Assembly (NCBI RefSeq): GCF_000143415.4
Contig: NW_003314267.1
Span: 124,001-188,000, forward strand
DNA length: 64,000 bases
Direction: 5' to 3'
DNA from: Selaginella moellendorffii
Taxonomy: Eukaryota; Plantae; Lycopodiophyta
Position 1 is the stretch's first letter; every line of letters begins with the position of its first letter. Below the pieces are notes generated by a model that was not told the origin of the DNA, ran no database searches, and saw only the letters and a program-made list of their open reading frames with translations. Positions 26,863 through 64,000 of the stretch are shown piece after piece. Made by a program: the position numbers and the translations under genes.

Positions 26863-27135
26863 TTCCATGTGTCATGTGTTGGTCCTTTTGGGTCCCTTTT
26901 TGGAGCCTCGCTTTTTGCTCGCTTCGTGCTCGTTCCTCGAGCACTTCTTTGGGAGTTCCACTCCCGCTCTTGACTTTTCAAGTTGGAGCTTTTGGTCCAA
27001 ACGTGTTACGCTCGTTTGGCTCTCGCTTCAGCCACTACCACGTGGCACCCTTTCCGGCTCCACTTTGGGGCCTAGGGATTTTGTGTCTCACATTGAGTTA
27101 GTTGTGTTCTAGACAAGATTTTTTAGTAGGGGTTT

Positions 27136-28807
27136 TGTAAGGTACTAAATTTTCTATTCTACTTTAGTCACTTAACCACACATTCAACCACTTGGAGGAG
27201 TCTCACTCACAACCTCCATAAGTCATATTCTGGATTTAAGGACTTGCTAACCCCAAGAATGGCATTCATGCCACTCAACCATTGCACTTGGTCCAAGTGC
27301 TCCACGTGTCTGATCCCATGACCAACACCCCAAAGTAGTACTGACATACCAATCTGTTACACTAAAGCTATGCCCATTCACCTTGGTCACACTGGTGGTC
27401 TAACACCACCTGCATCACAGTCCTGTCTCTCAAGGACTGGGCCATCCATCCATGAATGACCATCCTAAGTCCACTCCTTAGCATTTTTAAGATGCCCACA
27501 GACATGGGGAATAGCCTTCCCTAATATCCCTTTTATAGTCCCCACCAAGTCCCTTTTCTGTCCATGGCCATGTTCACCAACACTGCCATTGGGACAAGAC
27601 CCATAAGCGTAACTATTAAGTCCTACTATCTTTTAGGTTTTCCTCACCATGTGACTATATCTTTAGTCACTACACTAGAGGATTGCTCCTCTTCCTTTTC
27701 ACAGTCTGGGACTTTGGGATAACATTTCGGAATACCATGGCCTTACGCGAGTCTCATGGGTACTCTCCCCACCTTCTGCCTTTTAGTGCTCTAGCCATGG
27801 GCTTAGAGTGAGGTTCTGTTGAGCCATATTAGGTATCCAAGTAGGTAGTGCACTTCCTAGTGGTTATCCCATACCCCAACACCTGGATATAGCCTTTTTG
27901 GGCCAAACTGGCCTTTCCTGGCCAAACTAGCTCCATTGGAGTCCTCCCTCTACTATGCTTTTGGAGCTCACCAAACCCCCAGGGTTTGGGAGACGAACAC
28001 TTTGGGCTTTCATCCTTGGACTTTCATCCTTGGACTCGAACTTGAACTCGGACTCAGGCTTGGACTTGGACTCGGACTCAGACTCGGACTCAGACTCGGA
28101 CTCAGACTCGGACTCGAACTTGGACTTGGACTTGGACTCGGACTCGGACTCTGACTCGGGCTCAAGCTCCGGCTCGGGCTCGGTCTCAGCCTCGGCCTTA
28201 GTCCCGGTCCCGGTCCTGGTCTCGATGTCGGTCTCGGTCTCAGTCTCGACCTCAGACTCCATCTCGGGTCCTTCTCGGACTCCATCTCGGATTCCATCTT
28301 GGGTCCATTTTGGACTCCATCTCGGATTCCATCTCAGACTCCATCTCGGTCCATCTCGGGTCCATCTCGAGTCCATCTCGGGTCCATCTCAGGTCCGTCT
28401 TAGGTCCATCTCGGACTCCATCTCAATCCATCTCGGACTCCATCTCGGCTCCATCTTGGACTCCATTTCGGATTCCATCTCAATCCATCTCTGACTCCAT
28501 CTGAGGTCCATCTCAGACTCCATCTTGGGTCCATCTCGGGTCCATCTCGAACTCCATCTTGGTCCATCTTGAACTCTACCATGTGTCATGTGTTGGTCCT
28601 CTTGTACCCCTTTTCTAGAAACTCTCTTATTGCTTGCTTCATGCTCGTTCCTTGAGCACTCCGTCTGGAGTTCCACTCTCGCTCTCGACTCTTCAAATCA
28701 GAGCTTTTAGTCCAAATGTGTTATGCTTGTTTGGCTTTTGTTTCAGCCACTACCATGTGGCACACTTTCAGCCCCTCTTTGGGGCCTAGGGATTTTTATG
28801 TCTTATA
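27136..28807 (-). mobile_element. Older solo LTR of the W family
   Basis: Collinear with 19389-21219 over its whole length (tgtaaggtactaaattttc...ttatgtcttata) but clearly more diverged. The TSD is imperfect. Confidence 0.9.
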
Positions 28808-37510: not shown

Positions 37511-38653
37511 TGTAAGCCACAAATTTTTCCTTTCCAATTTGCCAGCTTACCTCGTCTATCCGACCAACTCTGCCTTGGCTTGTGCTAAGTTCCCTCGCCA
37601 AGGTTCTTGCCTATGGTACCAGCTCCTACTTGGTCCTACTTGGTTTCAGCTACTCACTGCACGAGCAACGGAGTGTTAGCCATCCATCTACGGATTCCCA
37701 AATCTCTCCCAATCCCCCTCCCCGGGTTAGACTGGACTTAAGGTTCGGCTACACTCCCCGCAGGCACAAGCAGCCAAGCACACCAAGCCTCCAGATTCCT
37801 AACACCCCTTGGTACCACAAGACTTGATCATGGGACCCTTTAAATCCCAAGCCTTGGGTGCAGCACTTGCTTCGGGACGTCGGGGCGAAACACCGTGGCC
37901 TAACGGCCCGGTATGGGTACCTTTACCCCCCCTTTTCCATCCCGAAGGGAAGGCCCAAGCCCCCGGAAGGGCGAGGACCAATGAGCCACTAGGTACTCAA
38001 GTGGGGCACCACTCCACCTAAGCCGGGAGCACTGCAGTCGGTTTCCCTTTCGGGAGTGGGAGCTGCTCTTGAGCACTTCCTTGGATGGCCCCTTGGGCAC
38101 CAGCCAAGTCCATGCTCACTCCCACCCAAGGCCCCTCGGTCCCAGTCTCAACCTCAAGTCGGTTTGGAAGCCCAACTAAAGAGTCCCTTCAAAACTGATT
38201 CCTGGACCTCACTATCCCTACTATACTTTTGGAACCCCCTGCAGCCCCCCCCCCCCCCTGGGAGACGCACGCTTTGGGCTTTCACCCCTTGACCCGTATT
38301 AGTATTTGGACTTAGTCTCTGGCTCGATCTCGGACCCAATTTCGGATCCGACTTCGGATTTGGTCTCGGACTCGATCTCGGACTCGATCTCGGACCCAAT
38401 CTCGGACCCGACCTCGGACTCGACCTCGGACTCGGTCTCGGACCCGATTTCGGATCTCGGACTCCGTCTCGGACTCGAACTCGGTCCCCGAGTCGGTCTC
38501 GGACTCGATTCCGGACTCTATCTCGAACTCGGTCCTAGAGTCGGTCTTGGACTCGATCCTCGACTTGGTCCCATCCGATGAACTCTTTGTCATTTTGGTC
38601 AAGCTTTTGGGGATCCTTTAGCCTACGACATCTCGGGGAGTCGGTTCCTTACA
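37511..38653 (-). mobile_element. Solo LTR U, distantly related to the W family, TSD TGTAT
   Basis: Termini TGTAAG..CTTACA with exact TSD at 37506-37510 / 38654-38658. Carries the GGGAGACG.ACGCTTTGGGCTTTCACCC motif and a CTCGGA-type array. Strand inferred from W. Confidence 0.88.
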
Positions 38654-43860: not shown

Positions 43861-46800
43861 ATGCGGGGCTCCAGGGCTCTTCCCGGTGATTCTTTGATCG
43901 ACTGGCTCAATGGCGTCGCTCCAGCATTCTTTTTGCTCCTGGCGGCGGCGCCTCTCTTTCTTGGAATCGATATCGTGGCGGCACAGAGTAGCGATGGGGG
44001 CCTTGACAGCGATCTTTCGGCATTGCTGGATTTCAAGGCGGGTTTGATTGATCCAGGTGACAGGCTCAGCAGCTGGAATCCATCGAATGCCGGCGCTCCA
44101 TGTCGATGGCGAGGGGTGAGTTGCTTCGCCGGGAGAGTCTGGGAGCTCCATCTTCCACGCATGTATCTCCAAGGATCGATCGCTGGTATGTGGTCTCTTA
44201 CTCTGTTTTCCCAAATTCTTTTGAGTGATGAGTGCTTCCACTTTTTGCCTATGCACAGACTTGGGGAGGCTGGGATCCTTGGATACGTTGAGCCTTCATT
44301 CCAACGCCTTTAATGGGTCTATTCCAGATTCTCTATCCGCTGCTTCCAATCTCCGGGTCATTTATCTCCACAACAATGCCTTTGATGGCCAAATCCCAGC
44401 GAGTTTGGCTGCGCTGCAAAAACTCCAGGTTCTCAATCTCGCCAACAACAGGCTAACCGGAGGCATTCCTCGCGAACTCGGGAAGCTCACATCATTGAAG
44501 ACGCTCGATCTGTCCATCAACTTTCTTTCAGCTGGCATTCCGTCAGAGGTATCCAACTGTTCCAGGCTGTTGTATATCAACCTCTCCAAGAACAGGCTTA
44601 CAGGTTCCATACCACCATCTCTCGGGGAGCTTGGTCTGCTGCGCAAGGTTGCTCTGGGTGGAAACGAGCTGACAGGAATGATTCCATCCTCGCTGGGAAA
44701 CTGCTCTCAGCTAGTGAGTCTGGATCTGGAGCACAATTTGCTGTCTGGGGCTATACCAGATCCTCTGTACCAGCTTCGTTTGCTCGAGAGACTGTTCCTG
44801 AGTACCAACATGCTGATCGGAGGCATCTCGCCTGCACTTGGCAACTTTTCGGTATTATCCCAGCTGTTTTTGCAAGACAACGCGCTTGGGGGTCCTATTC
44901 CTGCGTCCGTCGGCGCGCTCAAACAGCTCCAGGTGCTGAACTTGTCTGGAAACGCTTTGACCGGTAACATTCCTCCTCAAATAGCAGGGTGTACTACCCT
45001 TCAGGTTCTGGATGTACGGGTTAATGCTCTCAACGGTGAAATTCCCACAGAACTGGGTTCGCTGAGTCAGCTGGCCAATCTTACGCTCTCTTTCAACAAT
45101 ATCAGTGGAAGTATTCCACCGGAGCTGTTAAACTGCCGAAAGCTGCAAATTCTTAGACTGCAAGGCAACAAACTTTCTGGAAAGTTACCGGACTCGTGGA
45201 ACTCTTTGACAGGGCTTCAGATACTAAATCTGAGAGGGAATAATCTTTCCGGTGAAATTCCAAGCTCTCTTCTCAACATTTTGTCGCTGAAGGTACTGGA
45301 AGTCATACTGACGCGAAGTATTCCATCTGACTTTTAATCTCGGTTTGCAGCGTCTGTCACTTTCTTACAACAGTCTCTCGGGAAATGTGCCACTCACCAT
45401 CGGCAGGCTGCAAGAGCTACAAAGTTTGTCACTCTCGCACAACTCTCTGGAAAAAAGTATACCGCCCGAAATCGGCAACTGCAGCAACTTGGCGGTCTTG
45501 GAAGCGAGTTATAACAGGCTTGACGGGCCCCTCCCACCTGAGATAGGATATCTTTCTAAGCTTCAAAGATTGCAACTGCGGGACAACAAGCTCTCAGGAG
45601 AGATACCAGAAACGTTAATCGGCTGCAAGAATTTGACGTATTTGCATATTGGAAACAACAGGCTATCGGGAACTATTCCGGTTCTACTCGGTGGTTTAGA
45701 ACAGATGCAGCAGATCCGTCTAGAAAACAACCATCTTACTGGCGGTATACCGGCAAGTTTCAGTGCTCTGGTAAATCTACAAGCGCTCGACGTCTCCGTC
45801 AACAGTCTTACAGGACCAGTTCCATCGTTCCTCGCCAACCTTGAAAATCTAAGGTCGCTGAACGTATCATACAACCATCTCCAGGGCGAGATTCCTCCAG
45901 CGTTAAGCAAGAAGTTTGGAGCCAGCTCCTTTCAAGGCAATGCACGTCTGTGTGGAAGACCTCTAGTGGTGCAGTGCTCGCGATCGACAAGAAAGAAACT
46001 CAGTGGGAAAGTTTTGATCGCGACAGTGCTGGGCGCCGTCGTGGTTGGCACGGTCTTGGTGGCAGGCGCTTGTTTCCTGCTTTACATACTGCTACTGAGA
46101 AAACACAGAGACAAGGACGAGAGAAAAGCAGACCCAGGAACAGGGACGCCTACCGGGAACCTTGTCATGTTCCACGACCCGATTCCCTACGCCAAAGTTG
46201 TCGAGGCGACGCGACAGTTCGACGAGGACAGCGTCCTGAGCAGGACGAGATTCGGCATTGTCTTCAAGGCCTGCCTGGAAGACGGCAGCGTCCTCTCGGT
46301 GAAGCGCCTCCCGGACGGCTCCATCGACGAACCGCAGTTCCGGGGCGAGGCGGAGCGGCTGGGGAGCCTCAAGCACAAGAACCTGCTCGTTCTTCGCGGC
46401 TACTACTACAGCGCGGACGTGAAGCTGCTCATCTACGACTACATGCCCAACGGGAACCTGGCGGTGCTGCTGCAGCAGGCCAGCAGCCAGGACGGGAGCA
46501 TTCTCGACTGGCGGATGCGGCACCTGATCGCTCTCAACATCGCACGCGGCCTCCAGTTCCTCCACCACGCGTGCGACCCGCCGGTGGTGCACGGCGACGT
46601 CCGGCCTCACAACGTCCAGTTCGACGCCGACTTCGAGCCCCACATATCCGACTTTGGCGTCGAGAGGCTGGCGGTGACGCCCCCGGCGGACCCTTCAACG
46701 TCCTCGTCCTCCACTCCGGCCGGGGGATCGCTGGGCTACGTCTCGCCCGAGGCTGGCGCGACGGGGGTGGCCAGCAAAGAGTCGGACGTTTACGGGTTTG

Positions 46801-47141
46801 GGATCCTGCTGCTGGAGCTCCTGACGGGGCGGAAGCCCGCGACGTTCTCGGCCGAGGAGGACATCGTCAAGTGGGTCAAGCGGCAGCTGCAAGGGAGGCA
46901 GGCGGCGGAGATGTTTGATCCGGGACTGCTGGAGCTCTTCGACCAGGAGTCGTCCGAGTGGGAGGAGTTTTTACTGGCGGTGAAGGTAGCGCTGCTGTGC
47001 ACGGCGCCGGATCCCAGCGACCGGCCCTCCATGACCGAGGTGGTGTTCATGCTCGAGGGATGCCGGGGCGGCGGCGGCGGCGGCGGCGGCGGCGCGGAGG
47101 TGGCGTCGTCGGACCTCACCTCGCCATTGTCAGCTGTTTAG
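43861..47141 (+). CDS. LRR receptor-like kinase, MUSTACHES/MUL-like (LRR-VII), 3 exons
   Basis: LRRNT (ALLDFK...W...PCRWRGVSC), 24-aa plant LRRs, a TM helix, and kinase EATRQFDEDSVLSRTRFGIVFKA...DGSVLSVKRLPDG...HGDVRPHNVQFDADFEPHISDFG. Introns near 44185-44258 and 45292-45350; start codon uncertain. Confidence 0.9.
47066..47094 (+). repeat. (GGC)n encoding poly-Gly in the RLK tail
   Basis: ggcggcggc... run translated as CRGGGGGGGGGAEV. Confidence 0.9.
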
Positions 47142-47579: not shown

Positions 47580-49567
47580 TCATAGGTTCTCGCGTAGCCA
47601 TCTCAAAGCACCCTGGGCAGCGGACCTGCGGAGAGAAATAAGCCGAGCTTTTTCTTTGCTTTGTTCTCGTTCTTTGCTTACCCAATGGCGCTCGTCACCT
47701 TGCCCAAAACTCCACCATCTTCTTCTTCGTCTTGTTGGCCTTGGCTTTGGCTCTGTGCATTCTCTCCGTTCACACCTGCACAGGTTTCCAAGCTTCTAAG
47801 CCACCGCAAAATAGCTGCTCGGTGTGACTTACGCGCTTTTCCTTTGATTGGACTTCGAGATTTTTGCTGCTTTTGCAGATTTGCCAACTCCTCGATCAGG
47901 CTCTTCTCCGATTCACTGCAATGAAAGAGCAACCAACATAAGAAACCATATAGCCAATATCGACAAACGATTCAGTCACCTTAACCGCTTTGGAATCACT
48001 ATTTTGATTGTAAAGAAGTGATCCCCCCGCGCAGAAGGCCTGCTCAGGCGAGGAACTCCCATCTTTGAAAGCACGAGAACGTCACCTGGTTGTGTTCCAG
48101 GAGGTATTTGCAAGTCCATGGTCCCGCCTACAGTTTGTACCTATAAGCCCATCTTTTGACATCGATCCGACTGATATCATCACGACACTACCTTGATAGC
48201 AGTTCCCAAAATTGCGTCCGTGTAGTTAATCGAAACGGTCGAGTACAAATTCACCCCATCTCTCTGAATGCCAGGAACTTCCTTGACACTTAGATACAAA
48301 TAGAGATCTCCCGGTGGTCCACTGCAAAACCGAAAACAAATTAGAAAAAAACGCGTCTGATAGGCAACAACATACCCTCTCAGTCCAGCATCGCCTTCTC
48401 CGCGAACTCTCAAAGTGCTGCCATTGTCCACACCAGCCGGTATAGTCACCTTCAAACTTTTTTTCAATCGTACTCGTCCCTCGCCACCGCATTTGCGGCA
48501 GTAATCTGCAATAACTTCCCCCTCTCCTCCGCAGGACGTGCACGTAGACACCTGAAAGATGGCTGTGTAAAAATCCCGAAGGACGTATAGAAACGCATAC
48601 TCGAACCTGAGAAAACATGCCGAAAGGAGTTTCTTGAGTACGCATTACTTGGCCTCTCCCTCCGCAAGTAGGACAGACCCTTCGACTTGTGCTCGAGACG
48701 GCACCAGAGCCGCCACAAGCTCGACAGGATTCCAAGTGTGACGCCTCAAACTCCTTCTCTGCGCCGAAAATGGCCTCGGAGAACTCCAAAGTCATGTCGT
48801 AACTAGAAAACCAGACGAGGTCAATCAACTTACGAGACTCCTCACAAGCTTACCGAACGTCCTCACCCTGCACGGCAGTGCTTCTCCGCCTTGTTCCAGT
48901 TCCCATGCCTCCAAAGTTTCCCATGCCACCCATTCCAGCTCCAAAAAACGACTCCAGCAAGTCGAATGGATTGCTCTGTTAACAAGAAAGAGATCAAACA
49001 AGAGAAAGGAGGGAGAGAAACAAATCCCATACCGCATAAGCGCCAGCAGTAGATCCCATTCCAGGAGAGCCCTTGACTCCAGCCTCCCCGAATTGATCAT
49101 ACAAGCGCCTTTTATCATCATCGGATAACACCTACGTGAAAAATTCTACCACTCTTACTTTTTTTCTTTTTCGGATGAGGATGAGACGCATTTACCTCGT
49201 AAGCCGAGCTGATCTCCTTGAATTTCTCTTCTGCGCCTTTCTCCTTGTTGATATCTGGATGGAACTGCGGCAGATCATTGCCTCCAATCACAAAAATGCG
49301 GGACAGAACGAGCTGGCCTACCTTGCGAGCCAGCTTCCTATACGCGCTCTTGATTTCCTGCTTGCTCGCCCCCCTTTGGATGCCAAGAACTCCGTAGTAA
49401 TCCCCCGCCGCACAGATCCGAAATCTCTTGCTCTGCCGCTGCTGCTGGAGACGAACTCTGCCACTCCACGTCGATTTGGCGCCGCAGAAGCTCACCGAGG
49501 CCGTCTTGTCCCATCGATGGAGCGGTGAATTGCAGGGCAGCGCTCCAGCCACCGGCGCCATGGCCAT
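47580..49567 (-). CDS. Plastid type-A DnaJ co-chaperone (DJA7-like), multi-exon
   Basis: Transit-peptide-like N-terminus, J domain (DYYGVLG...AYRKLARK|FHPD), G/F region, four CxxCxGxG motifs, C-terminal domain and tail [14 protein letters not shown]. Confidence 0.92.
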
Positions 49568-49995
49568 TCTCGAGCACAATCCTCACGACGCCATAGCTCA
49601 GCGTTGCAAAACCCTAGAAGGATATTCCATTACTGTTCAAGCGCATATGCTTTATTTGAACAGGTCCGGCGTTCGAATCCCCACAGCTGCCGGGAAAAAA
49701 TATCTGGAGCAGCCTGTGCCACGTGACGTCTTGTGAGTGGGCCATTGGCAAGGTAGATCCAACCGCAGGTTCTAACGGTCTGATGCGTCCAAGGGTATAG
49801 GGCTTAGGGTTTTAGGGTCTGCATTTTCTTCGTCCAGTTTCGTCTATGCCGCGAGCGCCAGCGGCGTCGTCGTCCTCGTCCTAGAACTGGTAAGCGCTTT
49901 TGCTAGATTCGCCCTGTTTCGCCGTTTGATCGAGTGCGCGGTGCTGCAGCGAGTGATCGCCGCCGCTGTGGTGTGTTTTCTCGCTCACGCGCGCA
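49568..49995. promoter_or_regulatory. Putative bidirectional promoter / 5' UTRs (DnaJ / PPR) with telo-boxes, G-box and site II
   Basis: aaaccctag at 49608, gccacgtgacgtc at 49718, tgggcc at 49738 and ttagggtttt at 49804. Confidence 0.55.
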
Positions 49996-51976
49996 ATGTG
50001 GAAGGTCCGGAGAGCAGCGGCGTGTTCCTCATCGCTTCGCAAATGGTATTTCGAGCTTTTCTTGCTTGGTCTCGATTGTCTCGCTTGCTTTCTCGCGCTC
50101 CAGGTGCTTTACAGAGAAGAATGTGCCTCGGTGCTCACCGGGACTAGGGAGCTCGGATTCAAGAGCGGCATTTGCGAGACGGTGCTTCTCTCGAGCGCTG
50201 CTGCCTGGTGACGCGACCAGCTACGTGAAAACCAGCCGGGGTCTCTCTTTCTCGTATCGGGGCTTCGCCACCAGGCACGACAGCGCCTCCGACCTGTCCG
50301 AGAGCGACGAGTTTGAAGAGCCCGAATCGAGCAGCAGCCTAAAAGAGATCGAGGACGAGCCAGAGGAGACCAAGGAGGATGAAGACGAGGAAGAGGAGGA
50401 ACACGAGGACGTGAACTCGCACGAGCCGGTTACCGTGAAGTCTGTGGAGAAATCGAAGTCTGAGAGGCGGCTTACGCTGGCTCACAGTGACAAGCTGGAG
50501 CAAGAGCTTCTCGCGAGGATCTTTGCTTGCAAGAAGGACGAGAGTATGTCCTCGGTGCTGGACAAGTGGAAGGAGGAAGGGAAAGATCTCACCGTGAGCA
50601 TGATCGTGACGGTAATCAACAGGCTGAAGAACTCTAACCGGATGGCTCATGCCTTGGAGGTAAGAAAGAAAAGTTTCGGTTTCGTTCTTCTGTTTTTTAA
50701 CTTCTCTTCTACTTTGCTAGATGATCGAGTGGGTNNNNNNNNNNNNNNNNNNNNNNNNNNNNNNNNNNNNNNNNNNNNNNNNNNNNNNNNNNNNNNNNNN
50801 NNNNNNNNNNNNNNNNNNNNNNNNNNNNNNNNNNTCGAGATAACTGCGAGGTCCAAGGGGATCGCGGCCGCTGAGAAGCTGTTTGAGGAGCTCTCGGCCG
50901 AGGAGAAGACCCGGCCCGTGTACAACGCTCTCCTCACTCGCTACGTCTTTCTCCACAATGTGAAGAAGGCCGAGGGGCTGTTCGAGGAGATGGACAAGGC
51001 CGGCTTCCTGTCCCAGAGCCCCTTCGCGCTCAACCTCATGATGAAGCTCTACAAGCACAAGGGCGACAACGCAAAGTTCCAGGAGATGCTGGAGAAGGCC
51101 AAGGACGTGGCGGTGGAGCCGAACATCTTCACGTACAACGTGATGCTGGACCTCAAGGCCAAGGCCGGGGACGTCGAAGGCATGGAGAAGATCTTCGAGG
51201 AGATGAAGCTCAATCCAAACGCCAAGCCGGACGGGACCTCCTACTTCACGCTCTGCAAAGGCTACCTCAAGGCCGGGCTCACCGACAAGGCGGAGGTGAG
51301 CCTCCTGCGGATGGAAGTCGGGCCCTTCCGGAGGACGAAGGCGACGTTCGAGTACATGATGCTGGCTTACGGTCAGCTGGGACTGATCTCGGACGTGGAG
51401 CGGATGTGGCAGAAGTGCAAGATGGTTCCAGGCGATGGATTCAACAGCTTTCTGGCGTTCCAGCGGGCGATGGCGCTGGCAGGGGAGGTGCAGAGGGTGG
51501 ATTCGATGTTCAAGCATATGGACAAGTGGAAGCGGAGCAAAACGGTGGACTTGAAGCGGCACAACAACCTGCTGCTGGCGTACTACAAGAAGGGGATGAA
51601 GTGCGAGATCAAGGAGCTGGAGAAGAAGATGAACGAGATGGATCTGAGGGTGACGCTGGTGGACTGGGAGAAGGAGCCGATCAAGATGAGCAAGGCGGCC
51701 AAGGCGGTGGTGAGGAAGGACAAGGAGAAGGAGACGGCGGCGAGGAAGGGGCTGGAGGAGGCAGTGGAGAAGGCGGACGTGAAGGCGGCGGAGAGCGCGT
51801 TTGAGAAGTGCAAGGCGGGCAACATGGCCAAGGTTGGGGTGTGGAACAAGCTGCTCAAGGCATACGTGAATGCGCAGGTACCCGCCTATGGATTCTTGCA
51901 AAGGATGAAGGCGGAGGGGGTGGAGGCGAACGAGGAGACGCATAGTCTGCTCAAGAAGTTGCAAGTTGAGGCTTGA
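49996..51976 (+). CDS. P-class PPR protein, PPR596-like, probably mitochondrial; interrupted by an assembly gap
   Basis: MWKVRRAAACSSSLRKW|CFTEK targeting-like start (intron ~50046-50103), acidic tract, 35-aa P repeats (VYNALL, PNIFTYNVML), C-terminus AYVNAQVPAYGFLQRMKAEGV. Confidence 0.88.
50735..50834. other. Assembly gap (100 N)
   Basis: Run of n in the sequence. Confidence 1.
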
Positions 51977-52249
51977 CAATCTTTTAGCTCTTTTATCAAC
52001 TTAGCAAAAAAGACCCTTGTACGGTTAAGACTGTTTTACGGTTTAGGTTATAGGGATATTTCTTGAGGGCCACGTGACCAGAATGCATTTTTACGCACAA
52101 AAGGGTTTAAAGATATATGCTTCATATTTTTATAAAGGGTACATATAAAGATATATATCTTTATATCTTTATACCATACATTGATACATAGTCAAATCAC
52201 AAAAGTAGATCATCAACTCACATTTTTTATAAGAAGCAAAGGTAGTGGT

Positions 52250-54290
52250 GGATGACACAACAAATGTTTTAACTGTGATGGTGAAAGATTGTTTAATCAA
52301 CCAACAATGTCCAACTATGATCATGCTACATATGTTAAAGAAGGGATTCTATTAAGGGATTTTTAGAAGTGGATAATGAAGTTTTAAAAAGGTATCATTA
52401 GGACATCTAGGGCCAAAGGAAAGAGAAAAAAAAATGAAAAAATGGAGCTGAGCTTCAAAACTTAATAAGGATGCAAATATTAAGAAGCCAGAGTTTGTAG
52501 TTGAGATGTTGTGAAGATCTTAGTAGGGGATTTTTTTTAGGCAATAACATAACTTTGCAATGGAGATTCTTGAGAGGGATTATAGAAGGGAATCTTATTG
52601 ATGTAAGATGTGGTGCTGGAGATTCCAAAGGGGAATCTACCTATTTGTGAGGAACTAGATGGGGGTAAGTGTGGTTTAATGTGGTGCATTACAAGAAGGG
52701 AGTAGAGCAAGGAGGATGATAACAAGGAATCCTTGAATGGGAGAATTATGAACAAGTTTCAAGTCATGTTCACTAGAGGAAAAACTTATAATGTAGAGAT
52801 AGAATATAGTGAAAGGGAACCTAATGGAATTGAGGCTATATTAAAAGAATCATACTTGGGGAGGTGTTTAGATTTCAGAAGGGAATTCTATAATATGGTG
52901 ACCAGTGAGGAATTCTAAAGAGAGTCCTACTAAGATGGCAAATAAGGGATTTGTAATGTTGTTGCAATCAAGTATTTGAGGCACTTGTGAGGGAGATTTG
53001 CAATAGGGATGGATTGTGTTCAAGTGGCAATAAGATATGGTGTGGCCAATTCTAAAATAGTGACTATCAAGACAGTATTAGATCAAGTTCAAGAGATTGA
53101 TATGACTAGTAAAGTTCCTCTTGTTGCAAGAAAATTGGAAATGTGCAAGTGGAGATTCCAGAAGGGAATCCACTTGTTTTCACAAGTTTGTGCATGTAAC
53201 GCACCTAAATTTGGAGTTAAATTCTAAACCCATTATGCTACGAAACAAGGATACCTAAATTTACATTCACAAAATTGCCCTTGAACTAGGATGCAAATTT
53301 AATTTGCATCCTCACAACTTCTAACAAAGCAGGGTGTAGGGAGTGAGCATAACCCCACTGCACCTGCAACAAAGCTGCATGAGCTAATTAGGGCAATGAT
53401 GTGGATGGTGGAGCTAAGGTATTCTAAGATCTTGAGAATCTCAAAGTTGAAGAATAAAAGTGGGAAGCAATAGGGAATAAAGGTTAAGTTAGTTTTCACC
53501 CTACCCCTTGGGGATTTTGTGTTTAACAATGTTACTTGGAGTGTGAATTGGAATAAGGAGTGTTTGCACTTTGTATGCATTTTGAGTGTTTCCATCAGTG
53601 TTCGAAATAACTCGGAGTGAGTGGGAGATCTTGTGTTGGCATTTGCAGTGTGCTGCAAGGTTGGGTTATATGTACATATTTGTTTTGCTCCCACTAGCAA
53701 GTAGAAAGCAACCAAGTTGTATTAGCAAGAGATCAAAAAAGCATTATTATGCTGACATTTTAAATATTCCATGCCACCTAGCTTGAGTGATAAGTTTGGA
53801 TGGTATATGCCATCTAAACTGATCTAAGACATAAGGGGATTAAAATCTGCAAGGTGGAGGAGGCTAGTGTGCTGGCAAAGACATGGAGAACTGGCCAAAA
53901 CAATGTTGTGGAAAATCAAATTCAAGATGGTTGCAAATCTCTAAAATGGGTAAATACATTAGGTAATGCAATCAAGAGGAGATCCAAAAGGATCAGGAGT
54001 GGATACTATGTGCCACTAACTGAGATCCTCTATAAAGGACACTCCATGATTTAAGTCCTAGGAATCACTAGTAAGTGCCTTTAAATACAGGATTCTCTAG
54101 AGGGGATGGGATGGAGGCTTGGCTTCTACCTTCACTTCTTCTCCTTGCCTTTTATACCTGGCTTATAATGTAGCCTTGAGCTTGTGTGAGAGCATCCCAT
54201 GGCTTGCCAATAGTAACATAATGGCCTTGGGACTATCATCTTCAATGTGAATGCTTCCAATGTGTGGAGCATAGTTACACACAAATGTGT
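52250..54290 (+). mobile_element. Heavily decayed retrotransposon-like relic; boundaries approximate
   Basis: Purine-rich, CpG-poor DNA with many stops and faint protease-like (~53395) and RT-like (SKLDL-type, ~53810) remnants. Confidence 0.4.
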
Positions 54291-56503
54291 TTGTCTAGAA
54301 ATTTTGTCTTGGCAAACATTTGCTGCCCGTGTTTGTTAAACCATGTTCAAGAATATTCTTTTCTGTTAGGGCTCTTGAGCTGAGTGACACGATGCTGAGG
54401 AGAGAAGGGACTCTAGTGATATGGAGAAGGATTGGGCATTGGCAAACGATCTGAAAATGCTCAATATTCCTGGATTTAAGCATTGCCATGGAGGTTCTTC
54501 ATGGAAATATTAAGAATCTTTAACATTTTTTAGGGTTTTCTTAGTTTGTTGACAATGACCGCATTTGAACGTTTTCATGTTTGCTAAGTACTCTACGTGG
54601 AGAGTGGCTGGACGGAAAGATCTCTCACAGGCCTGCAAATGCCTGTGAAGGGGAATTTGTGGGAGCTGGTGCGTTGGGAGCCTACCAAACAGGCGGCCGA
54701 GCAGTGAATTAGAGAACCTTGGGCGAGAGCTTGGAGGAAGTTGCCCTTGATTCCTGGCCTGGTCCTATAGGGATGTGGATGGTACAAGCGATAGCTGCTA
54801 GCTTTACTAGCAATACGAAACTAGAAAACATTAAATTAACTGCTATATGAATCACTCAGATTTCTCGCAATGGCATCAAAAACATCATCTACCAGAACAG
54901 CCATATCATGGTTGATGTTCTTTACGCAATAGCCATGGATAATTTCTCGGCCCTTCAGAGGCTTTCACCACTTCGGCTGGCTGTTCCTTGTTCAGTACAG
55001 TCACTATACCTGAATGGTTGATCTACTCAGAAGAGCCAGATGGCACTGTCTTTTGGCGAGCCACACGTGGGGATATGGGTGACACAGATCAAGCTGAAGG
55101 GATTTCGTAACTGGTGGATTGAGCAGCAGCTCAAAGACCACCTAAGGAGGAATATTTATTATTTGACCTGTACCCTGTCATTGGGGGTCCGGGAGGAGCT
55201 ATGCTTGAGGCGGCAATCCGGTAAATAACGAGCCTTCTTCCAAAACCTAGATATCTTACTTGGTTACACGTACATTGCAAAGCATGTCAAATGTTTGTGA
55301 CAAACATAAACCTTAGCTGAAATACAAGATCAACTTTGGTCTATAAGATTGCTCAATTCAATATTTTATAGTTCACTTTATATTTCAAAAGCTCTTAAAT
55401 ATACAGATATGTAACAATTAACATAAAGGTACTATAAGTAAATTATATAATACTTTATTCCCGGCAGTGACGTGGACATTGCGTGACATTTATTTTATAA
55501 TTTTATAATTTTTATTTTATTTATTACATCTGAAACTTTATTTTGTATTTTATAAAGTAAAAAATTTATTTTTTATTTTTATGTCATATATATGATTTCT
55601 TAATTCAGCAGTTTGAATGATATTTTTAAATTTAAATGTTTCTACTAAATTCATCACAAATATATCCAAGAAAATATGCAACAACACTTTGTTTTGTGTT
55701 ATTCCTGTTTATCATTATGTAATAATGAATTGATCACAGCATAATTTGAGTTTATAATGTGTATTATAAACATATTTAACACATGAAGTATATAATTATA
55801 AATATGTTTGTAAACACAAGATCAATCTCATTGCATAATAAACTAGAATATATTAGAAAGTGTTTAGGAAAGTTTGATGGTGGAATATCCCAGAATATTT
55901 ATGCACAAGTGAATTAATAAATACATAAATAATTATAAGTGATTTTCAAAAAATTATATATGGAACATGGAAAAAGTAATATTAAAAATATTTTATAACA
56001 TTCTTAGAAACTTGAAAATATAAACTACAATTAATGAAGAGATTATATATATAGGCTACCTGTTTTATATACGGAGGCTACCTGTTTGATCGCGCTCAAG
56101 GCTGCCCGACAAGACAGGATCATGTCGTTGGCATCTCACACTGGGGATTGTTCTTATGGTCTGGCCTGAGTTCCGCTTTCTAACGATTTCTAACGAAGTT
56201 GATATATATATATTAATTAGTTTCTTTAAGTAAAGAGATAAACCATGCAGGTACTGGCACAAGTTTGCGCTCTACTCCACAGTCAGTGACAAAAGCTGCT
56301 AAAGATCACCTTGCTGCAGAAACCATCCATGGCCGTTGGGTGACGAACGCTCTCGTAGATGATGTTTATCATATAGTAGTTAAGTTTGCTTGGACCTCCC
56401 TGCGAGCTCCTCAGTGAGGATCTTGGCTCGTCAGATGAAATTTTTTCGTGGAGGAAACTTTTGAGAACCTTGAGCTGCGCTCTCTTCTCCGTCATGGCAA
56501 TGC

Positions 56504-59500
56504 TCACCGGACGATCTCCACACACACCTTCCCTGTGCCATAAAATTCCCCAAGTTGTTTGTAACTGTCGTCCTTATGATCGTAAAAGAGGTGTACTGGT
56601 CCATCCTCCCGAGAAGGAAGCCCGCAAGTTGCTCTGTCCACTTTTCTTCTTCTACCACCAAACCATGTTGCAAGACGGCCAAGAAGATCCGCTTGCTCGG
56701 CAGCCGCAGGAAAGGCTCCACTCGTCTTCTCAACTCCATCACGATCCTCCTCCCCACTTGGCACTTCTTCCTGCACAGCTATGACAACGTCGAGATTCCC
56801 CTGCTCGTTGTGTCGGGAAGGAACTGGCGCTTGATCATGGTTCGCTACTTCTTCCACAGCGGAAGCTGGAGCTTGATCACGCACACCTATGACAACGTCC
56901 AGCTCGTTGATTCTGGGAGAAGCTGCTTCCTCCACAGCTGTTCCCTTCAAGCTCGACTCAGTAACCTCCAGATCTGCCACTTCTTTGATCATACTTGTCA
57001 CGGGCTTTTCATCCTGCTCCTCCCAGTTTTCCAGAGCATTCCCCGTGTTGCCAGCCGAGTCTTCTTTCTCGAGAAGCTTGAAATGGATGTCGAGGGAGCG
57101 AGCACACCAATCCATCCATTGCCTCCTACGAGCGAGTGTTTCTTCTAAACCAGCGATAAACTCAGCTCCGAGTACATCACCACCATTCTTGCTAGCGGGC
57201 TGAATCTCATGCCCAGGCTTGAATTTCGTGGCATCTGCAAAACAATTGAATGGTTACTGAATCAAATTCAGAATCAAGTTACCTTCTTTGATAGTAGAGG
57301 CATGACTAGAAAAGCTGTTACAGTCATGTCTCATTCCTTTGTCTCCATCTCTCCAATCTTGCTTGTCCGGCTCGATCCACTCCCACAATGACGCAGGAAC
57401 ATGCTCGAAATCAAGCACCATCTTGGTTTCGCTATTAATCGCACCTGCAGAACAATCGTAGCTAAGCTTTCTATCATGAAAAACTTTAGATCGTCTTACC
57501 TTTGTAATAATTCTCGAGCTCAGCGGTGTAGTCGTTGAAGAAGTCAATATGAGACTCCCTTCTCCTTCTCATCTTATCCTCGTCCATGATCGCAGGCTCG
57601 TGAACAAGCCAAGAAAAGTCTGATCTCCAAGCCTGGATCGAGTTTTCCTTGAGCTGCGCGTCGTAGTAGTCGATGTGATAAGCGTGGTACTTCACTCTCT
57701 TGCGGAGTCGAGACACTTCCATAGCAGATTCCCAGTCAAGATGGTCTCTCTTTTGGCGGCGTGGAAGGCCGAGGATTTGGCTGCGAGGAACTTGGTCACT
57801 CTCCACCATCTCGACTTCCAGAGGCTGAGATTTCCTCTCCTTTGCATCTGAAAGAACCACCATCCTCTCGTCACTATCAAGATTCTTGGGAGTCCTGACA
57901 AGTTGATCCCCCTCAATCTGGTCACCTGTAAACGAATGACGTGTGAGTTCTACATATCCCTGCAGAGAGTGATCATACCTTCGATAAAGATGATGCATTC
58001 TTCACTTGTCTTCTCAACTCCGTTCGCTATTTCCTCCACAGCTGTTGCCTTCAAGCTAATCTCAGCAACGCCCAGATCTGCCAATGAGTCTCTGTGTGAA
58101 CTTGTCACAAGCGTTTCTTCTTCTTCATGATCCGACTCATCCTGCTCCTCGCACTTTTCCAGGGCATTATTTGTGTTGCCAAAGTCTCCTTCCTCAAGAA
58201 GCTTGAAATGGATGTTGAGGGAGCGAGCGCACCGATCAATCCATTGCCTTCGACGAGCGAGTGTTTCTTCTAAACCAGCGATAAACTCAGCTCCGAGTAC
58301 GTCACCACCAATCTTGCTAGCGGCCTGAACCTCATGGCCATGCTTGACTCTCATGGCATCTGCAAAACAATTGAATGTTTACTGGATCAAACTGAGAATC
58401 ACATTACCTTGTTCGATAGTAGAAGCCCGACCAAAAAAGCTGTTACTTCCCTTGAGATCTCCATCGCTCCAATCTTGATTATCCGCCTTGATCCAATCTC
58501 CCAATGACGCAGGAACATGTTTGAAATCAAGCTCCATGCAAGCCAAGGACATGTGCTCCACCATCTTGATTTCGCTGTTAATCGCACCTGCAAAAACATT
58601 CGTAGATAAGCTTTTTATCATCGAAGAATTTAGATCCTCGAACCTTTGTCCCTCATTTTCTGGAGATCTTTGTCACTCCAGTCTTGAATATTCGCCTTGA
58701 TCCATTCAGAAGGAGCGTGCTTGTACTCAAGCTTCATGCAGTTAGTCGCACCTGCAAAACAATCGTAGATAGGCTTTCTATCATCGATGAATTTTGGATA
58801 CTCAAACCTTTGTTGTTCTCGAGTATATTGCTGTAGGAGTCAATATCCATTCTCCTTCTCATTTCATCCTCGTCCGCGATCTCAGGCTCGTGAACAGATG
58901 CGTGGTACATCGCTCTCTTGTGGACTTCGATAGCCCGTTCAAATCCCCGCGGTGGAAGGCCGACGATTTGGCTGCAAGGAACTTGGCCACTCTCCACCAT
59001 CTCGACTTCCAGAGGCTGAGAGTTCCTCTCCTCTGCATCGTCCCTGTATGAAAGGTCCACCATACTATCGAGATTCCTGGGAGTCCTGACAAGTTGATCC
59101 CCCTCGATCTGTTCACCTGTAAACGAATGACATTAGTTTCTAATAACCGCATGCATTGATCATACCTTCGATAAAGATGACGCATTCAGCTCCACTTGTC
59201 TTCTCACTTCCATTATGATCCTCCTTCAAGCTCAACTCAGTAACGTCACGATCTGTCACGAGCGTTTCTTCTTCTTCATGATCCGACTCATCCTGCTCCT
59301 CACTCTTTTCCAGAGCACTATTTGTGTTTCCAGAGTCTCCTTCCTCAAGAAGCTTGAAATGGATGTTGAGGGAGCGAGCGCACCGATCAATCCATTGCCT
59401 TCGACGAGCGAGTGTTTCTTCTAAACCAGCGATAAACTCAGCTCCGAGTACGTCACCACCATTCTTGCCAGCGGGCTGAATCTCATGGCCAGGCTTGAAT

Positions 59501-61032
59501 CTCGTGGCATCTGCAAAACAATTGAATGGTTACTGAATCAAATTCAGAATCACATTACCTTGTTCGATAGTAGAAGCCTGACCAAGAAAGCTTTTACTTC
59601 CCTTTTGATCTCCATCGCTCCCATCTTGATTATCCGCCTTGATGCACTCCCACAATGACGCAGGAACATGTTTGAAATCAAGCTCCATACAAGCCAAAGA
59701 CATGTGCTCCACCATCTTGATTTCGCTGTTAATCGCACCTGCAAAAACATTCGTAGATAAGCTTTTTATCATCGAAGAATTTAGATCCTCGAACCTTTGT
59801 CCCTCATTTTCTGGAGATCTCTGTCACTCCAGTCTTGAATATTTGCCTTGATCCATTCAGAAGGAGCGTGCTTGTACTCAAGCTTCATGCAGTTAGTCGC
59901 ACCTGCAAAACAATCGTCAATAAGCTTTCTATCATCGATGAATTTTGGATACTCAAACCTTTGTTGTTCTCAAGTATATCGCTGTAGGAGTCAATATCCC
60001 TTCTCCTTCTCATTTCATCCTCATCCACGATCTCAGGCTCGTGAACAGACTTGTGGACTTCGATAGCCCGTTCAAATCCCCGCGGTGGAAGGCCGACGAT
60101 TTGGCTGCAAGGAACTTGGCCACTCTCCACCATCTCGACTTCCAGAGGCTGAGAATTCCTCTCCTCTGCATCGTCCCTGTATGAAAGGTCCACCATACTA
60201 TCAAGATTCCTGGGAGTCCTGACAAGTTGATCCCCCTCGATCTGTTCACCTGTAAACAAATGACATTAGTTTCTAATGACCACCTTGCACTGATCATACC
60301 TTCGATAAAGATGATGCATTCAGCTCCACTTGTCTTCTCACTTCCATTATGATTCTCCTTCAAGCTCAACTCAGTAACGTCAAGATCTGTCACGAGCGTT
60401 TCTTCTTCTTCATGATCCGACTCATCCTGCTCCTCACTCTTTTCCAGAGCACTATTTGTGTTTCCAGAGTCTCCTTCCTCAAGAAGCTTGAAGTGGATGT
60501 TGAGGGAACGAGCGCACCGATCAATCCATTGCCTCCGACGAGCAAGTGTTTCTTCTAAACCAGCGATAAACTCAGCTCCGAGTACGTCACCACCAATCTT
60601 GCTAGCGGCCTGAACCTCATGGCCATGCTTGACTCTCATGGCGTCTGCAAAACAATTGAATGTTTACTGAATCAAACTCACTCAACTCAGAATCAAATGA
60701 CCTTGTTCGAAAGTAGAAGCCTGACCAAAGAAGCTGTTTACATCCACGTCGTGCTCAACCTCGGCAACACCTCCGGCCTGACCAAAGAAGCTGTTTACAT
60801 CCACCTCGCGCTCAACCTCGGCAGCATGTCCGATCCTCTCGTCTTCCTCGCGCACAAGCAAGATGACGGCTCCCTTGTCTGTGCCCGTGTTTAGGGGCAT
60901 AATCGCACGGGATTTGCGGCCGTGCCTCCACAAAAGACCCCACCACAGCGCCATACCCAAGACAAGTAGTCCGATGATCAAAATCGTTGTCTCCACGCTC
61001 ACCATAGCGGCGCCCACCATTCTTACTTCCAT
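56504..61032 (-). CDS. Orphan single-pass membrane protein built from tandem exon cassettes, 13 exons, ~1298 aa
   Basis: Exons 61032-60702, 60644-60300, 60249-59959, 59902-59795, 59738-59559, 59510-59166, 59116-58808, 58751-58644, 58587-58408, 58359-57979, 57925-57500, 57444-57283, 57234-56504. All introns are GT-AG, 48-57 nt and phase 1, and the joined 3897-nt frame has no internal stop. Confidence 0.72.
56900..60730. repeat. ~1.13-kb tandem repeat, ~3.3 copies, underlying the orphan gene
   Basis: The block aaaccagcgataaactcagctccgagtac recurs at about 57147, 58272, 59423 and 60557. Confidence 0.95.
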
Positions 61033-61882
61033 CAGCCCTATTATTTTTTAGTTAGCCCTATTTCGTTTAGCATTTTTTATGTGATCCTCTCTTGATATTA
61101 GGTCATTTGGTTCACAAAAAGGTGGCGGCAAGTTGAAACTAACTAATGGTTGGAAAGAGCCTAGCAGTGCCTTTTTGAAGCATGCTTTGAGACTGGCAGA
61201 GGGTGGGAGTTTTAATCCACATGGAGTAGCAAGATTGAACCATGTGTCCAGCTTAGACTATTCTTTTTCTTCTCACTGCTCTTGAGCTTGTCTGGCTCGC
61301 CAATTAGGGGCCTTCTTGCAGTTGGATTGCTACCGACCAGCTCACAATAGCAAGGGAGTTGCCATGCACAGATTCTTTAATTTATCTTTCCTATTTTTAA
61401 CTTCTTTTGCTACTTTTGAATAAGGGATTTCTAGAAAATAGACTCCACAAACACCATGATCATGCAAAATGAGCAACATTTCATGCTTAAGGAATTCTTA
61501 TTAATGATGATTAATAATATACATCTTTAAACCTTTACTATATATTTAAAGTATATGTTCTAAATATACACTGAAGATTGCTGTAAAACTGGATAAAAGA
61601 ACTTTTAAATTCCACAGCCCCTCGTAGCACGAACACACCGCAGTCGTTTTGTTCCAAGTCACAGTACACCTCCCCCATAAGATCACGTGTTGACGATTGT
61701 GTTCCCAAGGATCACATCAAGGAGCTCATTTTTGCGACTATCCTCTCGTGGGTCGATGCGATCACCCCCAAGCTCATGACTCAGGGGACATAGAGGATGC
61801 TCGGTGCCACCACAGTCTTTATCCCTTGAATCTTCCTGAGTGCCATCTCATGGAATCCGACCACAACATGTACCTCTGATCC

Positions 61883-62282
61883 AGAGACGACACGCTCGAC
61901 AGGATCTTCCAAGAGGGCCGCGTGAAATCCAGCATTGACAATGGCCTCACAGATAGTCTCTACCTGGGAATCTACTACTGTTTAATAGAGTGTATGATGA
62001 GATGGTTGTCACTCCAGTCTCTCTCGCGGCAGTGCTCGGCCTCTTGCTTCTAAAGAATAAAGAAAGAACTTACATCAACCAACCTTGGCCACCCCGGGAG
62101 TCTTTTGAGAGCCTTTTAGCAGTGCATTCCATGCCAGTTACCTTGGAGGGATCGTCCCTGCCGTTCGTGCGTGGCAATGTCGAATTACAGCATTGACATG
62201 GTAATCGTCGATGGATTGCCGTTGCCCGATCCAGCGGCAGTGCTCCTGCCCGCTCGCTGTCCATCCCCTCCCTCGCCGCCCT
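61883..62282. pseudogene. Scrambled fragments of the 5' part of HMA5, including intron sequence
   Basis: 61883-61970 matches 8174-8273, 62046-62150 matches 8324-8494 with deletions, and 62174-62282 matches the reverse complement of 8531-8660. Confidence 0.88.
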
Positions 62283-62283
62283 T

Positions 62284-62427
62284 GCTCAGACCTGGCCATA
62301 AAAAAGGCATTGAAGCAGCTCTATGTGATCAACTGGTAAAAGATTGATCGATGAGAAAACAGCCAACATTGTCGAGGAGACTTTGAGTTCCGGTAACCAA
62401 TCACACCATTCTCAAAGATATGTGGTT
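62284..62427 (+). pseudogene. Fragment of SDH5 exon 2
   Basis: ggccataaaaaaggcattgaagcagctcta...atcacaccattctcaaagata matches 41821-41967 with indels and a stop. Confidence 0.88.
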
Positions 62428-62614
62428 CTCGGCCCATCTCATATGACATCAACAGGTGATTGCTTACAGCAAAAGATGGTCAGTCAAATTCATTTTCACA
62501 AAGCTTACTTCTGTGCTAGAAAGCACCATCTGCTTGATAATTGCTCTGAAACAGAACCATTAGTATTGATATAGCATTTAAAGAAAGAAAGAAGGAAAAA
62601 CAAAAGCTTTAAGC

Positions 62615-62900
62615 TTATCTCAATTAATCCACCTGCCTATCTATTCCTATATAATAAGCACTCATGGTGTTATGGGGCATTGCAAATTGTCCCTGAAGGG
62701 CAAAGTTTTTTGTAATGTATTGCTTTAGTTTTTGGGATTATGCTTTTATTTCTTGATTCTTTGTTCTTTAGATTTAGATTTCTTGTGTTTTTTGCCAGAT
62801 TTAGGATTGTATCTATCAAATTTACTTTCCTTTAACCTTCTTTACATTATCTTTCATCTTTGATCAGGAGTGTATCATTGGAGGTTGCATATATTACTTT
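62615..62900 (+). mobile_element. Fragment of the LTR end and leader of the type-A element family
   Basis: aagggcaaagtttttt...ttgggatt.tgctttt matches 13225-13340. Confidence 0.6.
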
Positions 62901-63576
62901 GTTGTCTTCATTTGGCATTAATGAGCTTTTGGTGCTGTTAGACATGCAGTTAAGAGATGATTTTTTTTAAATTTTTATTATTATCTAAAATACTCCTACA
63001 AATGGAATTTGTTTTATATACCCGACTGATCTTCTAGCAAGACTATGGTATTCCTTTGGCAAACGCAGAAAGACAAAAGTAAAACAAAAGTAAATTAGGG
63101 TAATAGTAGTACATTAAATGCTAATAAAACGATTATTATCACAAATAGATAGAAAAAGAAATGATTATCCTTCTAAAAATGAGAATCTATTTGTTATTCA
63201 ATTTGATAGATTTCAAGTTCTATTAACTTTTCAACGAATGGAAGGTATGTTCATGAGGATATAATTCAAACTTATTAGTTAAAGAAGAATGGTTAAGTTT
63301 AGGATTAAGAAATATTTATAATTCATACCAAGAAGTTATGTTAAATTCAGGTCTACTAGTTGTAGAATTACAATATGTATATATATCAGTTTGAATATAT
63401 TATTATTATTCTAAGGCAGTATAATAGAGATTTAACTTCTTTTATTTATGCTATTAATAAATATAACTCAATTGAGTATTGTGAAACTAAATTAACTATG
63501 CTGGATTTAGAAATATTTTCTTACATCCTATTGTGAGTGCATGGAATATAGAAAGGGAATACAGAAATGTGCATAT

Positions 63577-64000
63577 TGTGAGACACAAAATCCCTAGGCC
63601 CCAAAGTGGAGCCGGAAGGGTGCCACATGGTAGTGGTTGAAGCGAAAGTTAAACGAGCATAACATGTTTGGACTAAAAGCTCTGACTCGAAAGGTCGAGA
63701 GTGGGAGTGGAACTCCCAACAAAGTGCTCGAGGAATAAGCACGAAGCGAGCAATAAGTGAGGCTCTAAAAAGGGACCCAAAAGGACCAACACATGACACG
63801 TGGAAGAGTCCGAGATGGAGTCCAAGGTGGAGTCCGAGGTGGAGTCCGAGATGGAGTCCGAGACGGAGTCCGAAGTGGAGTCCGAGATGGACCGAGATGG
63901 AGTCCGAGGTGGAGTCCGAGATGGAGTCCGAGATGGAGTCCGAAGTGGAGTCCGAGATGGACTGAGACAAAGTCTAAGATGGAATCCAAGATGGACCGAG
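63577..64000 (+). mobile_element. W-family LTR in the opposite orientation, truncated by the window end, abutting a type-B LTR remnant (63532-63576)
   Basis: Starts TGTGAGACACAAAATCCCTAGGCCCC, the reverse complement of the end of W at 27092. The preceding 45 bp are the reverse complement of the type-B LTR 3' end. Confidence 0.9.

What the first reader, a model, noticed from the sequence alone, without database searches (positions are those of the whole stretch)
56504..61032. Orphan membrane protein gene made entirely of symmetric phase-1 exon cassettes
Seen: the ORF track shows only short fragments here, but splicing at GT-AG sites gives one uninterrupted 3897-nt frame (~1298 aa). The order is exon 1 (TM helix TILIIGLLVLGMALWWGLLW followed by RHGRK), then A-B-C-D-A-B-C-D-A-B-D-A. 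All 12 introns are phase 1 and every internal exon length is a multiple of 3 (345, 291, 108, 180, 345, 309, 108, 180, 381, 426, 162). Length differences between copies of the same exon are also multiples of 3 (B: 291/309/426; A: 345/345/381; D: 180/180/162), which argues for selection on the frame. I recognise no domain. Known: 1-1 symmetric exon duplication is the classic modular route for animal proteins and is less typical of plant genes. Inference: a lineage-specific modular membrane-anchored scaffold or receptor whose repeats face the cytosol (positive-inside rule).
Basis: partly seen in the sequence, partly recalled or inferred. Interest (0 to 1): 0.88.

Follow-up and report, generated by a model that had tools for sequence, protein, structure and literature searches.

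The report
Spikemoss orphan gene, variable exon blocks
This is a real, spliced, already annotated but uncharacterised gene known only from the spikemoss Selaginella moellendorffii; it encodes a membrane-anchored, mostly floppy protein carrying 2 to 4 copies of one conserved helix, and the copy number changes as whole blocks of exons are duplicated and swapped, which is a clear example of a known way genes grow rather than a new system.

Summary
Observation confirmed: 13 exons, 3897 nt, 12 GT-AG phase-1 introns of 48-57 nt, no in-frame stop. RNA supports every junction class. The window is S. moellendorffii scaffold GL377571.1. The gene is already annotated as SELMODRAFT_406784 (D8R2X5), so it was not hidden. 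The family has four copies, all intact and all phase 1: this one (4 A exons), its allele on the other haplotype (3), and an inverted paralogue 25-34 kb away (2 on both haplotypes). No homologue was found outside the species and no domain. Selection is real: 11/11 coding indels keep frame (11/28 in flanks). It is concentrated on a 40-residue amphipathic helix (pN/pS about 0.25-0.35). A exons are recombinant mosaics (p=5e-5). The 12 phase-1 introns descend from only three ancestral introns, so this is tandem block duplication, not exon shuffling. Best reading: a signal-anchored, probably ER/endomembrane, cytosol-facing multivalent adaptor or tether. It is not an ectodomain receptor; function is untested. 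The scan found the same gene before on the other haplotype (s1-332897). Interest 0.3.

The parts
60702..61032 (-). Exon 1: start, signal-anchor helix, basic patch, linker, two 57-nt repeats, D-like tail
   Evidence: RNA coverage and E1-to-A joint
60928..60984 (-). Predicted single transmembrane helix (residues 17-35), followed by four K/R in seven residues
   Evidence: Kyte-Doolittle 2.33; Wimley-White 0.40-0.56 by window length; AF2 helix 9-34 in paralogue
60719..60832 (-). Two 57-nt in-frame repeats; the other three gene copies have one (L001 plus 9 nt)
60300..60644 (-). Exon A1 (345 nt); conserved helix at 60472-60591
59959..60249 (-). Exon B1 (291 nt, short type)
   Evidence: B1-C1 joint
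59795..59902 (-). Exon C1 (108 nt), shortened paralogue of D
59559..59738 (-). Exon D1 (180 nt)
   Evidence: D1-A2 joint
59166..59510 (-). Exon A2 (345 nt); helix at 59338-59457; mosaic, with a 5' part like A4 and the paralogue and a 3' part like A1
58808..59116 (-). Exon B2 (309 nt, short type)
58644..58751 (-). Exon C2 (108 nt)
   Evidence: loose end
58408..58587 (-). Exon D2 (180 nt)
   Evidence: D2-A3 joint
57979..58359 (-). Exon A3 (381 nt); helix at 58187-58306
57500..57925 (-). Exon B3 (426 nt, long type shared with the 2-unit paralogue); predicted helical at low confidence
   Evidence: B3-D3 joint
57756..57789 (+). 34 nt inside B3 shared exactly with another transcript of the same organism that runs on the opposite strand
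   Evidence: table 7; exact in 3 of 4 long-B copies
57283..57444 (-). Exon D3 (162 nt, short type)
56504..57234 (-). Last exon A4 (731 nt with stop): diverged A exon with internal expansion, running on to the stop; helix at 57062-57181

Best explanation
A young, lineage-restricted, protein-coding gene of S. moellendorffii. SHOWN: it is transcribed at a low level and spliced. It exists as four intact copies with 2, 2, 3 and 4 A exons. The history that best fits the copies is E1-A-B-D-A, then addition of one A-B-C-D block (C arising as a D duplicate), then a second block on this haplotype only (direction inferred, no outgroup). Units exchange sequence by unequal crossover or gene conversion. The frame and a 40-residue amphipathic helix in each A exon are under purifying selection. 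INFERRED: the protein is a signal-anchored (N-out, C-in) membrane protein, probably ER/endomembrane. Its acidic, largely disordered cytosolic tail (pI 4.7, 21% D/E) presents the repeated helix as a coiled-coil or partner-binding element, so it works as a multivalent adaptor or tether whose reach and valency scale with block number. Uniform phase 1 permits this growth but was inherited from three ancestral introns.
For: Gene model and RNA. Four intact copies, 28/28 introns phase 1. Synteny of the two scaffolds. A1 and A2 are sister copies (95/92) to the exclusion of the allele's copy. Mosaic A exons. Indels 11/11 vs 11/28 in frame, Fisher p=7e-4. Helix 13 synonymous vs 10 non-synonymous variants, p=0.001-0.01 over kappa 1-6. 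AF2 helix 18-57 at pLDDT 89-97 in its core, rest below 50. I/L every seventh residue. TMD Wimley-White 0.40-0.56 against the 0.4 ER threshold (PMC4010795). Symmetric exons, disorder and internal tandem duplication go together (PMC3632108).
Against: No protein-level evidence, localisation or partner. Outside the helix, constraint is weak (overall pN/pS 0.53-0.81 depending on kappa; long B 0.99, long D 0.84). The whole-protein model is low confidence (mean pLDDT 30), built on an alignment of only three rows, so disorder is not proven. No read spans a whole 4-unit transcript, and short reads cannot be assigned cleanly among copies. The basic patch after the helix also fits organelle outer-membrane targeting.
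Confidence: 0.5

Rival explanations
1. A nearly dispensable young orphan. The frame is kept, but block number drifts neutrally by unequal crossover, and the tail has no specific binding role.
For: Block number differs even between the two haplotypes. Low expression, about 30 of 9.2 million reads. pN/pS near 1 in long B and long D. No homologue elsewhere.
Against: All four copies are intact with no frameshift among 11 indels. The helix is constrained across 11 copies, although conversion could contribute to its uniformity.
Confidence: 0.22
2. The same architecture, but anchored in the chloroplast or mitochondrial outer membrane (works like CHUP1 or Tom70/Toc64-type signal-anchored proteins).
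For: N-terminal helix followed by a basic patch is the organellar signal-anchor layout (PMC4010795). With a 23-residue window the hydrophobicity falls to 0.40.
Against: The core 17-21 residue windows score 0.48-0.56, above the 0.4 threshold below which over 89% of organellar signal-anchored proteins fall. That rule comes from Arabidopsis.
Confidence: 0.13
3. A chimeric gene assembled from captured gene fragments by a transposon or by break repair, later expanded in tandem.
For: 34 nt of exon B3 match another gene's transcript exactly in antisense. A decayed piece of the neighbouring M50 peptidase gene lies in the 3' flank. The paralogue is an inverted duplicate.
Against: No long inverted repeat around the gene, no transposon domain, only four copies. 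This explains origin, not function, and is compatible with the best explanation.
Confidence: 0.1
4. The hydrophobic stretch is a cleaved signal peptide or type II anchor, and the repeats are secreted or luminal.
For: Hydrophobic segment within the first 35 residues. The 1-1 phase class is typical of extracellular animal proteins (own knowledge).
Against: Basic residues follow rather than precede the helix. There is no conserved cysteine pattern, and only two N-glycosylation sequons within exons of 1298 aa.
Confidence: 0.05

Closest known systems
SELMODRAFT_406784 / EFJ33184.1 / D8R2X5 (this gene); 415907 (allele); LOC9633975 = 406789 and 415899 (paralogue pair)
   Same: The window is identical to GL377571.1 and the annotated exons are the same.
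   Different: The annotation starts at Met10 and gives no function. No paper names four of these identifiers or D8R2X5.
Genes grown by internal tandem duplication of symmetric exons encoding disordered regions (Schad, Kalmar, Tompa 2013, PMC3632108)
   Same: Runs of same-phase symmetric exons, similar neighbouring exons, low predicted order.
   Different: Described for human genes. Here the repeat is a 3-4 exon block of about 1.15 kb in a lycophyte, polymorphic between haplotypes.
Metazoan class 1-1 exon-shuffled modular proteins (EGF, fibronectin III, Ig modules; own knowledge)
   Same: All internal exons are 1-1 symmetric.
   Different: No folded, disulfide-bonded module; no module found in any other gene; predicted cytosolic; one-gene tandem growth.
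N-terminally anchored coiled-coil adaptors of plants: MyoB/DUF593 myosin receptors, CHUP1, MFP1 (own knowledge)
   Same: N-terminal membrane anchor, acidic low-complexity linker, short heptad helix; a 'works like' model only.
   Different: No sequence or profile match. Those families are conserved across land plants and do not vary in exon-block number.

Membership tests
Tandem symmetric-exon duplication gene | Consecutive internal exons of one phase class, lengths multiples of 3 | tested here: met
   12/12 introns in the window, 28/28 over four copies
Tandem symmetric-exon duplication gene | Homology between repeated exons and their introns | tested here: met
Tandem symmetric-exon duplication gene | Spliced and kept in frame by selection | tested here: met
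Tandem symmetric-exon duplication gene | Encoded region largely disordered | tested here: inconclusive
   Low pLDDT from shallow alignments; composition 21% D/E; no disorder predictor run
Class 1-1 shuffled-module proteins | Exon encodes an autonomous folded domain found in unrelated genes | tested here: not met
   A profile finds only family members among 1.84e9 proteins; B-D region likewise; no Pfam, PDB or Atlas hit
Signal-anchored ER/endomembrane protein | Single N-terminal TMD with Wimley-White hydrophobicity above 0.4 | tested here: met
   0.40-0.56 depending on window, borderline at 23 residues; rule from PMC4010795
Signal-anchored ER/endomembrane protein | Observed localisation and N-out/C-in topology | not testable with these tools
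   needs a GFP fusion and a topology assay
MyoB/DUF593, CHUP1, FRIGIDA-like coiled-coil families | Family domain detectable by profile | tested here: not met
   No Pfam family reaches its cut-off at E up to 10; best are E about 0.03-0.05 noise, including DUF1068 in one copy only
Transposon ORF | Transposase, gag, RT or helicase domain; terminal repeats; high copy number | tested here: not met
Cell-surface receptor | Extracellular ligand-binding domain | tested here: not met
   Only 7-16 residues precede the TMD and no second TMD exists; assumes the predicted topology

The most novel reading that the evidence does not exclude
The gene is a tunable membrane tether or adaptor. Its valency (2-4 helices) and the two variant motifs in front of each invariant helix are actively diversified by unequal crossover, gene conversion and possibly exon skipping, and kept polymorphic by balancing selection. 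It would be one member of a Selaginella-specific class of phase-1 cassette orphan genes. Not excluded: haplotypes differ in block number, A exons are mosaics, one RNA contig shows an A-long to B-short join absent from all four reference copies (may be an assembly chimera), and unchecked scan notes list several other phase-1 cassette genes in this genome.
Probability: 0.1. Interest if true: 0.6.

Novelty: new member of a known kind. Interest (0 to 1): 0.3.

Why it matters
It is a compact natural series (2, 2, 3, 4 units in one genome) for watching an orphan plant protein grow by exon-block duplication and conversion while one short helix stays constrained. That helix matches no known family, so finding its partner would define a new binding motif. 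The evolutionary mechanism itself is established, and nothing here shows a new pathway.

Tried and rejected
Pfam on each exon, on opposite-strand ORFs and on the full public proteins: nothing at cut-off. PDB sequence searches: best E 0.15. ESM Atlas by features: blank twice. Atlas by shape with the low-confidence model: TM at most 0.22, meaningless. Length-limited homologue searches with A4, P0001 and the B-D-A region: family members only or nothing; lengths under 133 aa were not covered by these, but one search has no length limit for the A exon. A common ancestor of exons A, B and D: no similarity above shuffles. Positive selection on the two A-exon N-flank types (7 non-synonymous, 0 synonymous between A1 and A2): not significant, and pN/pS is 0.53 over all copies. 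Assembly artefact for the fourth unit: unlikely, because units 1 and 2 differ at many sites, but not checked with DNA long reads. Papers naming the gene: none. Left out under the operators' rules: a search with my own joined spliced model (exons were searched by reference; the public protein P0003 was later used by id), and a search with the stitched loose-end sequence around 57756-57789, which has no reference.

Full report
1. Observation. The model was rebuilt from the sequence. On the minus strand there are 13 exons from 61032 to 56504, 3897 nt in all, with internal lengths 345, 291, 108, 180, 345, 309, 108, 180, 381, 426, 162. All 12 introns are GT-AG, 48-57 nt and phase 1. Each exon is open in the required frame, and all junction codons start with G, so the frame is uninterrupted. 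The order E1-ABCD-ABCD-ABD-A matches the repeat families with about 1.15 kb spacing.

2. Expression. Public runs of one organism hold the stretch. Two contig sets guessed to be RNA and one RNA-seq read set skip four of the predicted introns at the predicted ends: 59900/59957, 59510/59559, 58359/58408, 57442/57498. The classes E1-A, A-B, C-D and D-A(last) appear as joints or loose ends, some in paralogue-type form. First mates lie on the + strand, consistent with a minus-strand RNA in a stranded library. Expression is low: 58 reads were laid out of 9.2 million, and about 26 of them belong to another gene. Exon C exists only in this locus and its allele, so B-C and C-D joints show that this locus is expressed. 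No piece spans a whole transcript. Run X7 is unspliced and behaves like DNA.

3. Identity. Neighbours are PPR, LRR receptor kinase, heavy-metal ATPase, APO and DnaJ genes. A profile of the four A exons found only two cluster representatives among 1.84 billion proteins. Their clusters and one further search gave five records of four genes, all S. moellendorffii. P0003 (SELMODRAFT_406784, 1289 aa) is this gene, and its locus is 100% identical to the window. P0001 (415907) lies in the same gene order on scaffold GL377594.1. I read this as the other haplotype; that the v1.0 assembly holds both haplotypes is my own knowledge. An inverted, divergently oriented paralogue lies 34 kb (GL377571.1) and 25 kb (GL377594.1) away. 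Exon structures: this copy E1-ABCD-ABCD-ABD-A; allele E1-ABCD-ABD-A; both paralogues E1-ABD-A. All are intact and all 28 introns are phase 1. The scan had already described the allele (s1-332897); I took the species lead and the '2 to 4 units' from that note and then confirmed both here.

4. How the gene grew. Introns fall into three homologous classes. C is a shortened D, E1 ends in a D tail, and the last exon is an expanded A that still holds the A-exon end motif and runs on to the stop. A, B and D show no mutual similarity. The 12 phases therefore reduce to three independent ones. With rough plant frequencies (own knowledge: about 57/22/21%), three introns of one phase would arise about 20% of the time and three of phase 1 about 1%; also, a block can only be duplicated in frame if it is symmetric as a whole. 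In the tree of A exons, the window's A1 and A2 are sisters (95/92) to the exclusion of the allele's copy, which fits a duplication on this haplotype, or later homogenisation (midpoint root only). A exons are mosaics. Informative sites come in runs, 7 sites grouping 1+3 against 2+4 and later 10 grouping 1+2 against 3+4. Neighbouring-site incompatibility is far below permutation (p=5e-5). Two variants of the motif before the helix are shared between units, paralogues and haplotypes.

5. Selection. Within exon subtypes, 11 of 11 indels are multiples of 3, against 11 of 28 in the flanks (Fisher p=7e-4; flank counts depend on the alignment). Variant counts give pN/pS 0.54 overall, rising to 0.75-0.81 and losing significance when a strong transition bias is assumed. 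In the A helix the ratio is 0.24-0.35, p=0.001-0.01 throughout. Long B and long D are near 1 on few sites. So the frame and the helix are constrained; the rest is only weakly so.

6. Protein. There is one hydrophobic segment, at residues 17-35, followed by a basic patch, and no other TMD. Wimley-White hydrophobicity is 0.40-0.56; in Arabidopsis over 85% of ER signal-anchored proteins score above 0.4 and over 89% of organellar ones below (PMC4010795). The tail is acidic, pI 4.7. AlphaFold2 gives each A exon a single 40-residue helix with high confidence and nothing else, with I or L at every seventh position. The 2-unit paralogue models at mean pLDDT 30, with tentative helices in long B and D. 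No family, structure or Atlas match was found. Other Selaginella genomes may be missing from these libraries, so 'species-specific' means 'within the searched data'.

7. Mechanism and rivals. Best (0.5): a signal-anchored, cytosol-facing multivalent adaptor or tether on the ER/endomembranes, with 2-4 helices on flexible acidic spacers. The gene evolution is shown; topology, location and role are inferred. Rivals: nearly dispensable orphan with neutral block number (0.22); organelle outer-membrane anchor (0.13); chimeric origin from captured fragments (0.10, about origin and partly compatible with the best reading); secreted or luminal (0.05).

8. Comparison. It works like genes grown by internal tandem duplication of symmetric exons encoding disordered regions, a pattern quantified in the human genome (PMC3632108). 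It is not a member of the 1-1 shuffled-module class, since no exon encodes a domain found elsewhere. It is not a receptor and not a transposon ORF. Resemblance to MyoB/DUF593 or CHUP1 is architectural only.

9. Verdict. Real, ordinary in mechanism, unexplained in function, already annotated and already noted by this scan on the other haplotype. New member of a known kind; interest 0.3.

Noticed in passing
window 57756-57789 (exon B3): 34 nt shared exactly with another, more abundant transcript of the same organism on the opposite strand (contigs in X1 and X5; 26 and 22 loose-end reads in X10). It is exact in three of four long-B copies and has 5 mismatches in short-B copies. By eye, the other transcript reads like the region after protein-kinase subdomain IX (own knowledge, untested). 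Suggests B holds a captured antisense gene fragment; the donor is not in this window.
   Followed up: partly
window 56101-56161 and 55372-55452; L001 13587-14040: Decayed pieces matching the 3' end and flank of the M50/PDZ peptidase gene that neighbours the paralogue; annotated as a 174-aa M50 gene on the other haplotype.
   Followed up: partly
RNA contig 12 of run X5 (57977-58282 joined to 59964-60247): A long-type A exon joined to a short-type B exon, a combination absent from the four reference copies: a further recombinant allele or an assembly chimera.
   Followed up: no
window 19388-21220, 25328-28796, 38216-38573, 63576-64000: Several copies of a repeat element with 6/12/23/35-nt tandem arrays (CTCGGA-type), up to 93% identical over 1.8 kb; probably a transposon family.
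   Followed up: no
L001 vs window 50800-63400: The two haplotypes are only about 76-91% alike, with many indels, in the intergenic and PPR region around this gene, against 98.6% in the DnaJ/LRR-kinase region.
   Followed up: no
window 9001-10992, 49934-51976, 44225-47141, 5801-8291, 3308-4231, 48226-48828: Ordinary neighbours: two PPR genes, an LRR receptor kinase, a heavy-metal P-type ATPase, an APO RNA-binding protein and a DnaJ gene.
   Followed up: no
L003 and L004, annotated 3' ends of P0004 and P0005: The JGI models of the paralogues extend past the stop shared by all four copies by splicing into 3'-flank sequence; the RefSeq model P0002 ends like the window gene, so the extensions are probably mis-annotation.
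   Followed up: partly
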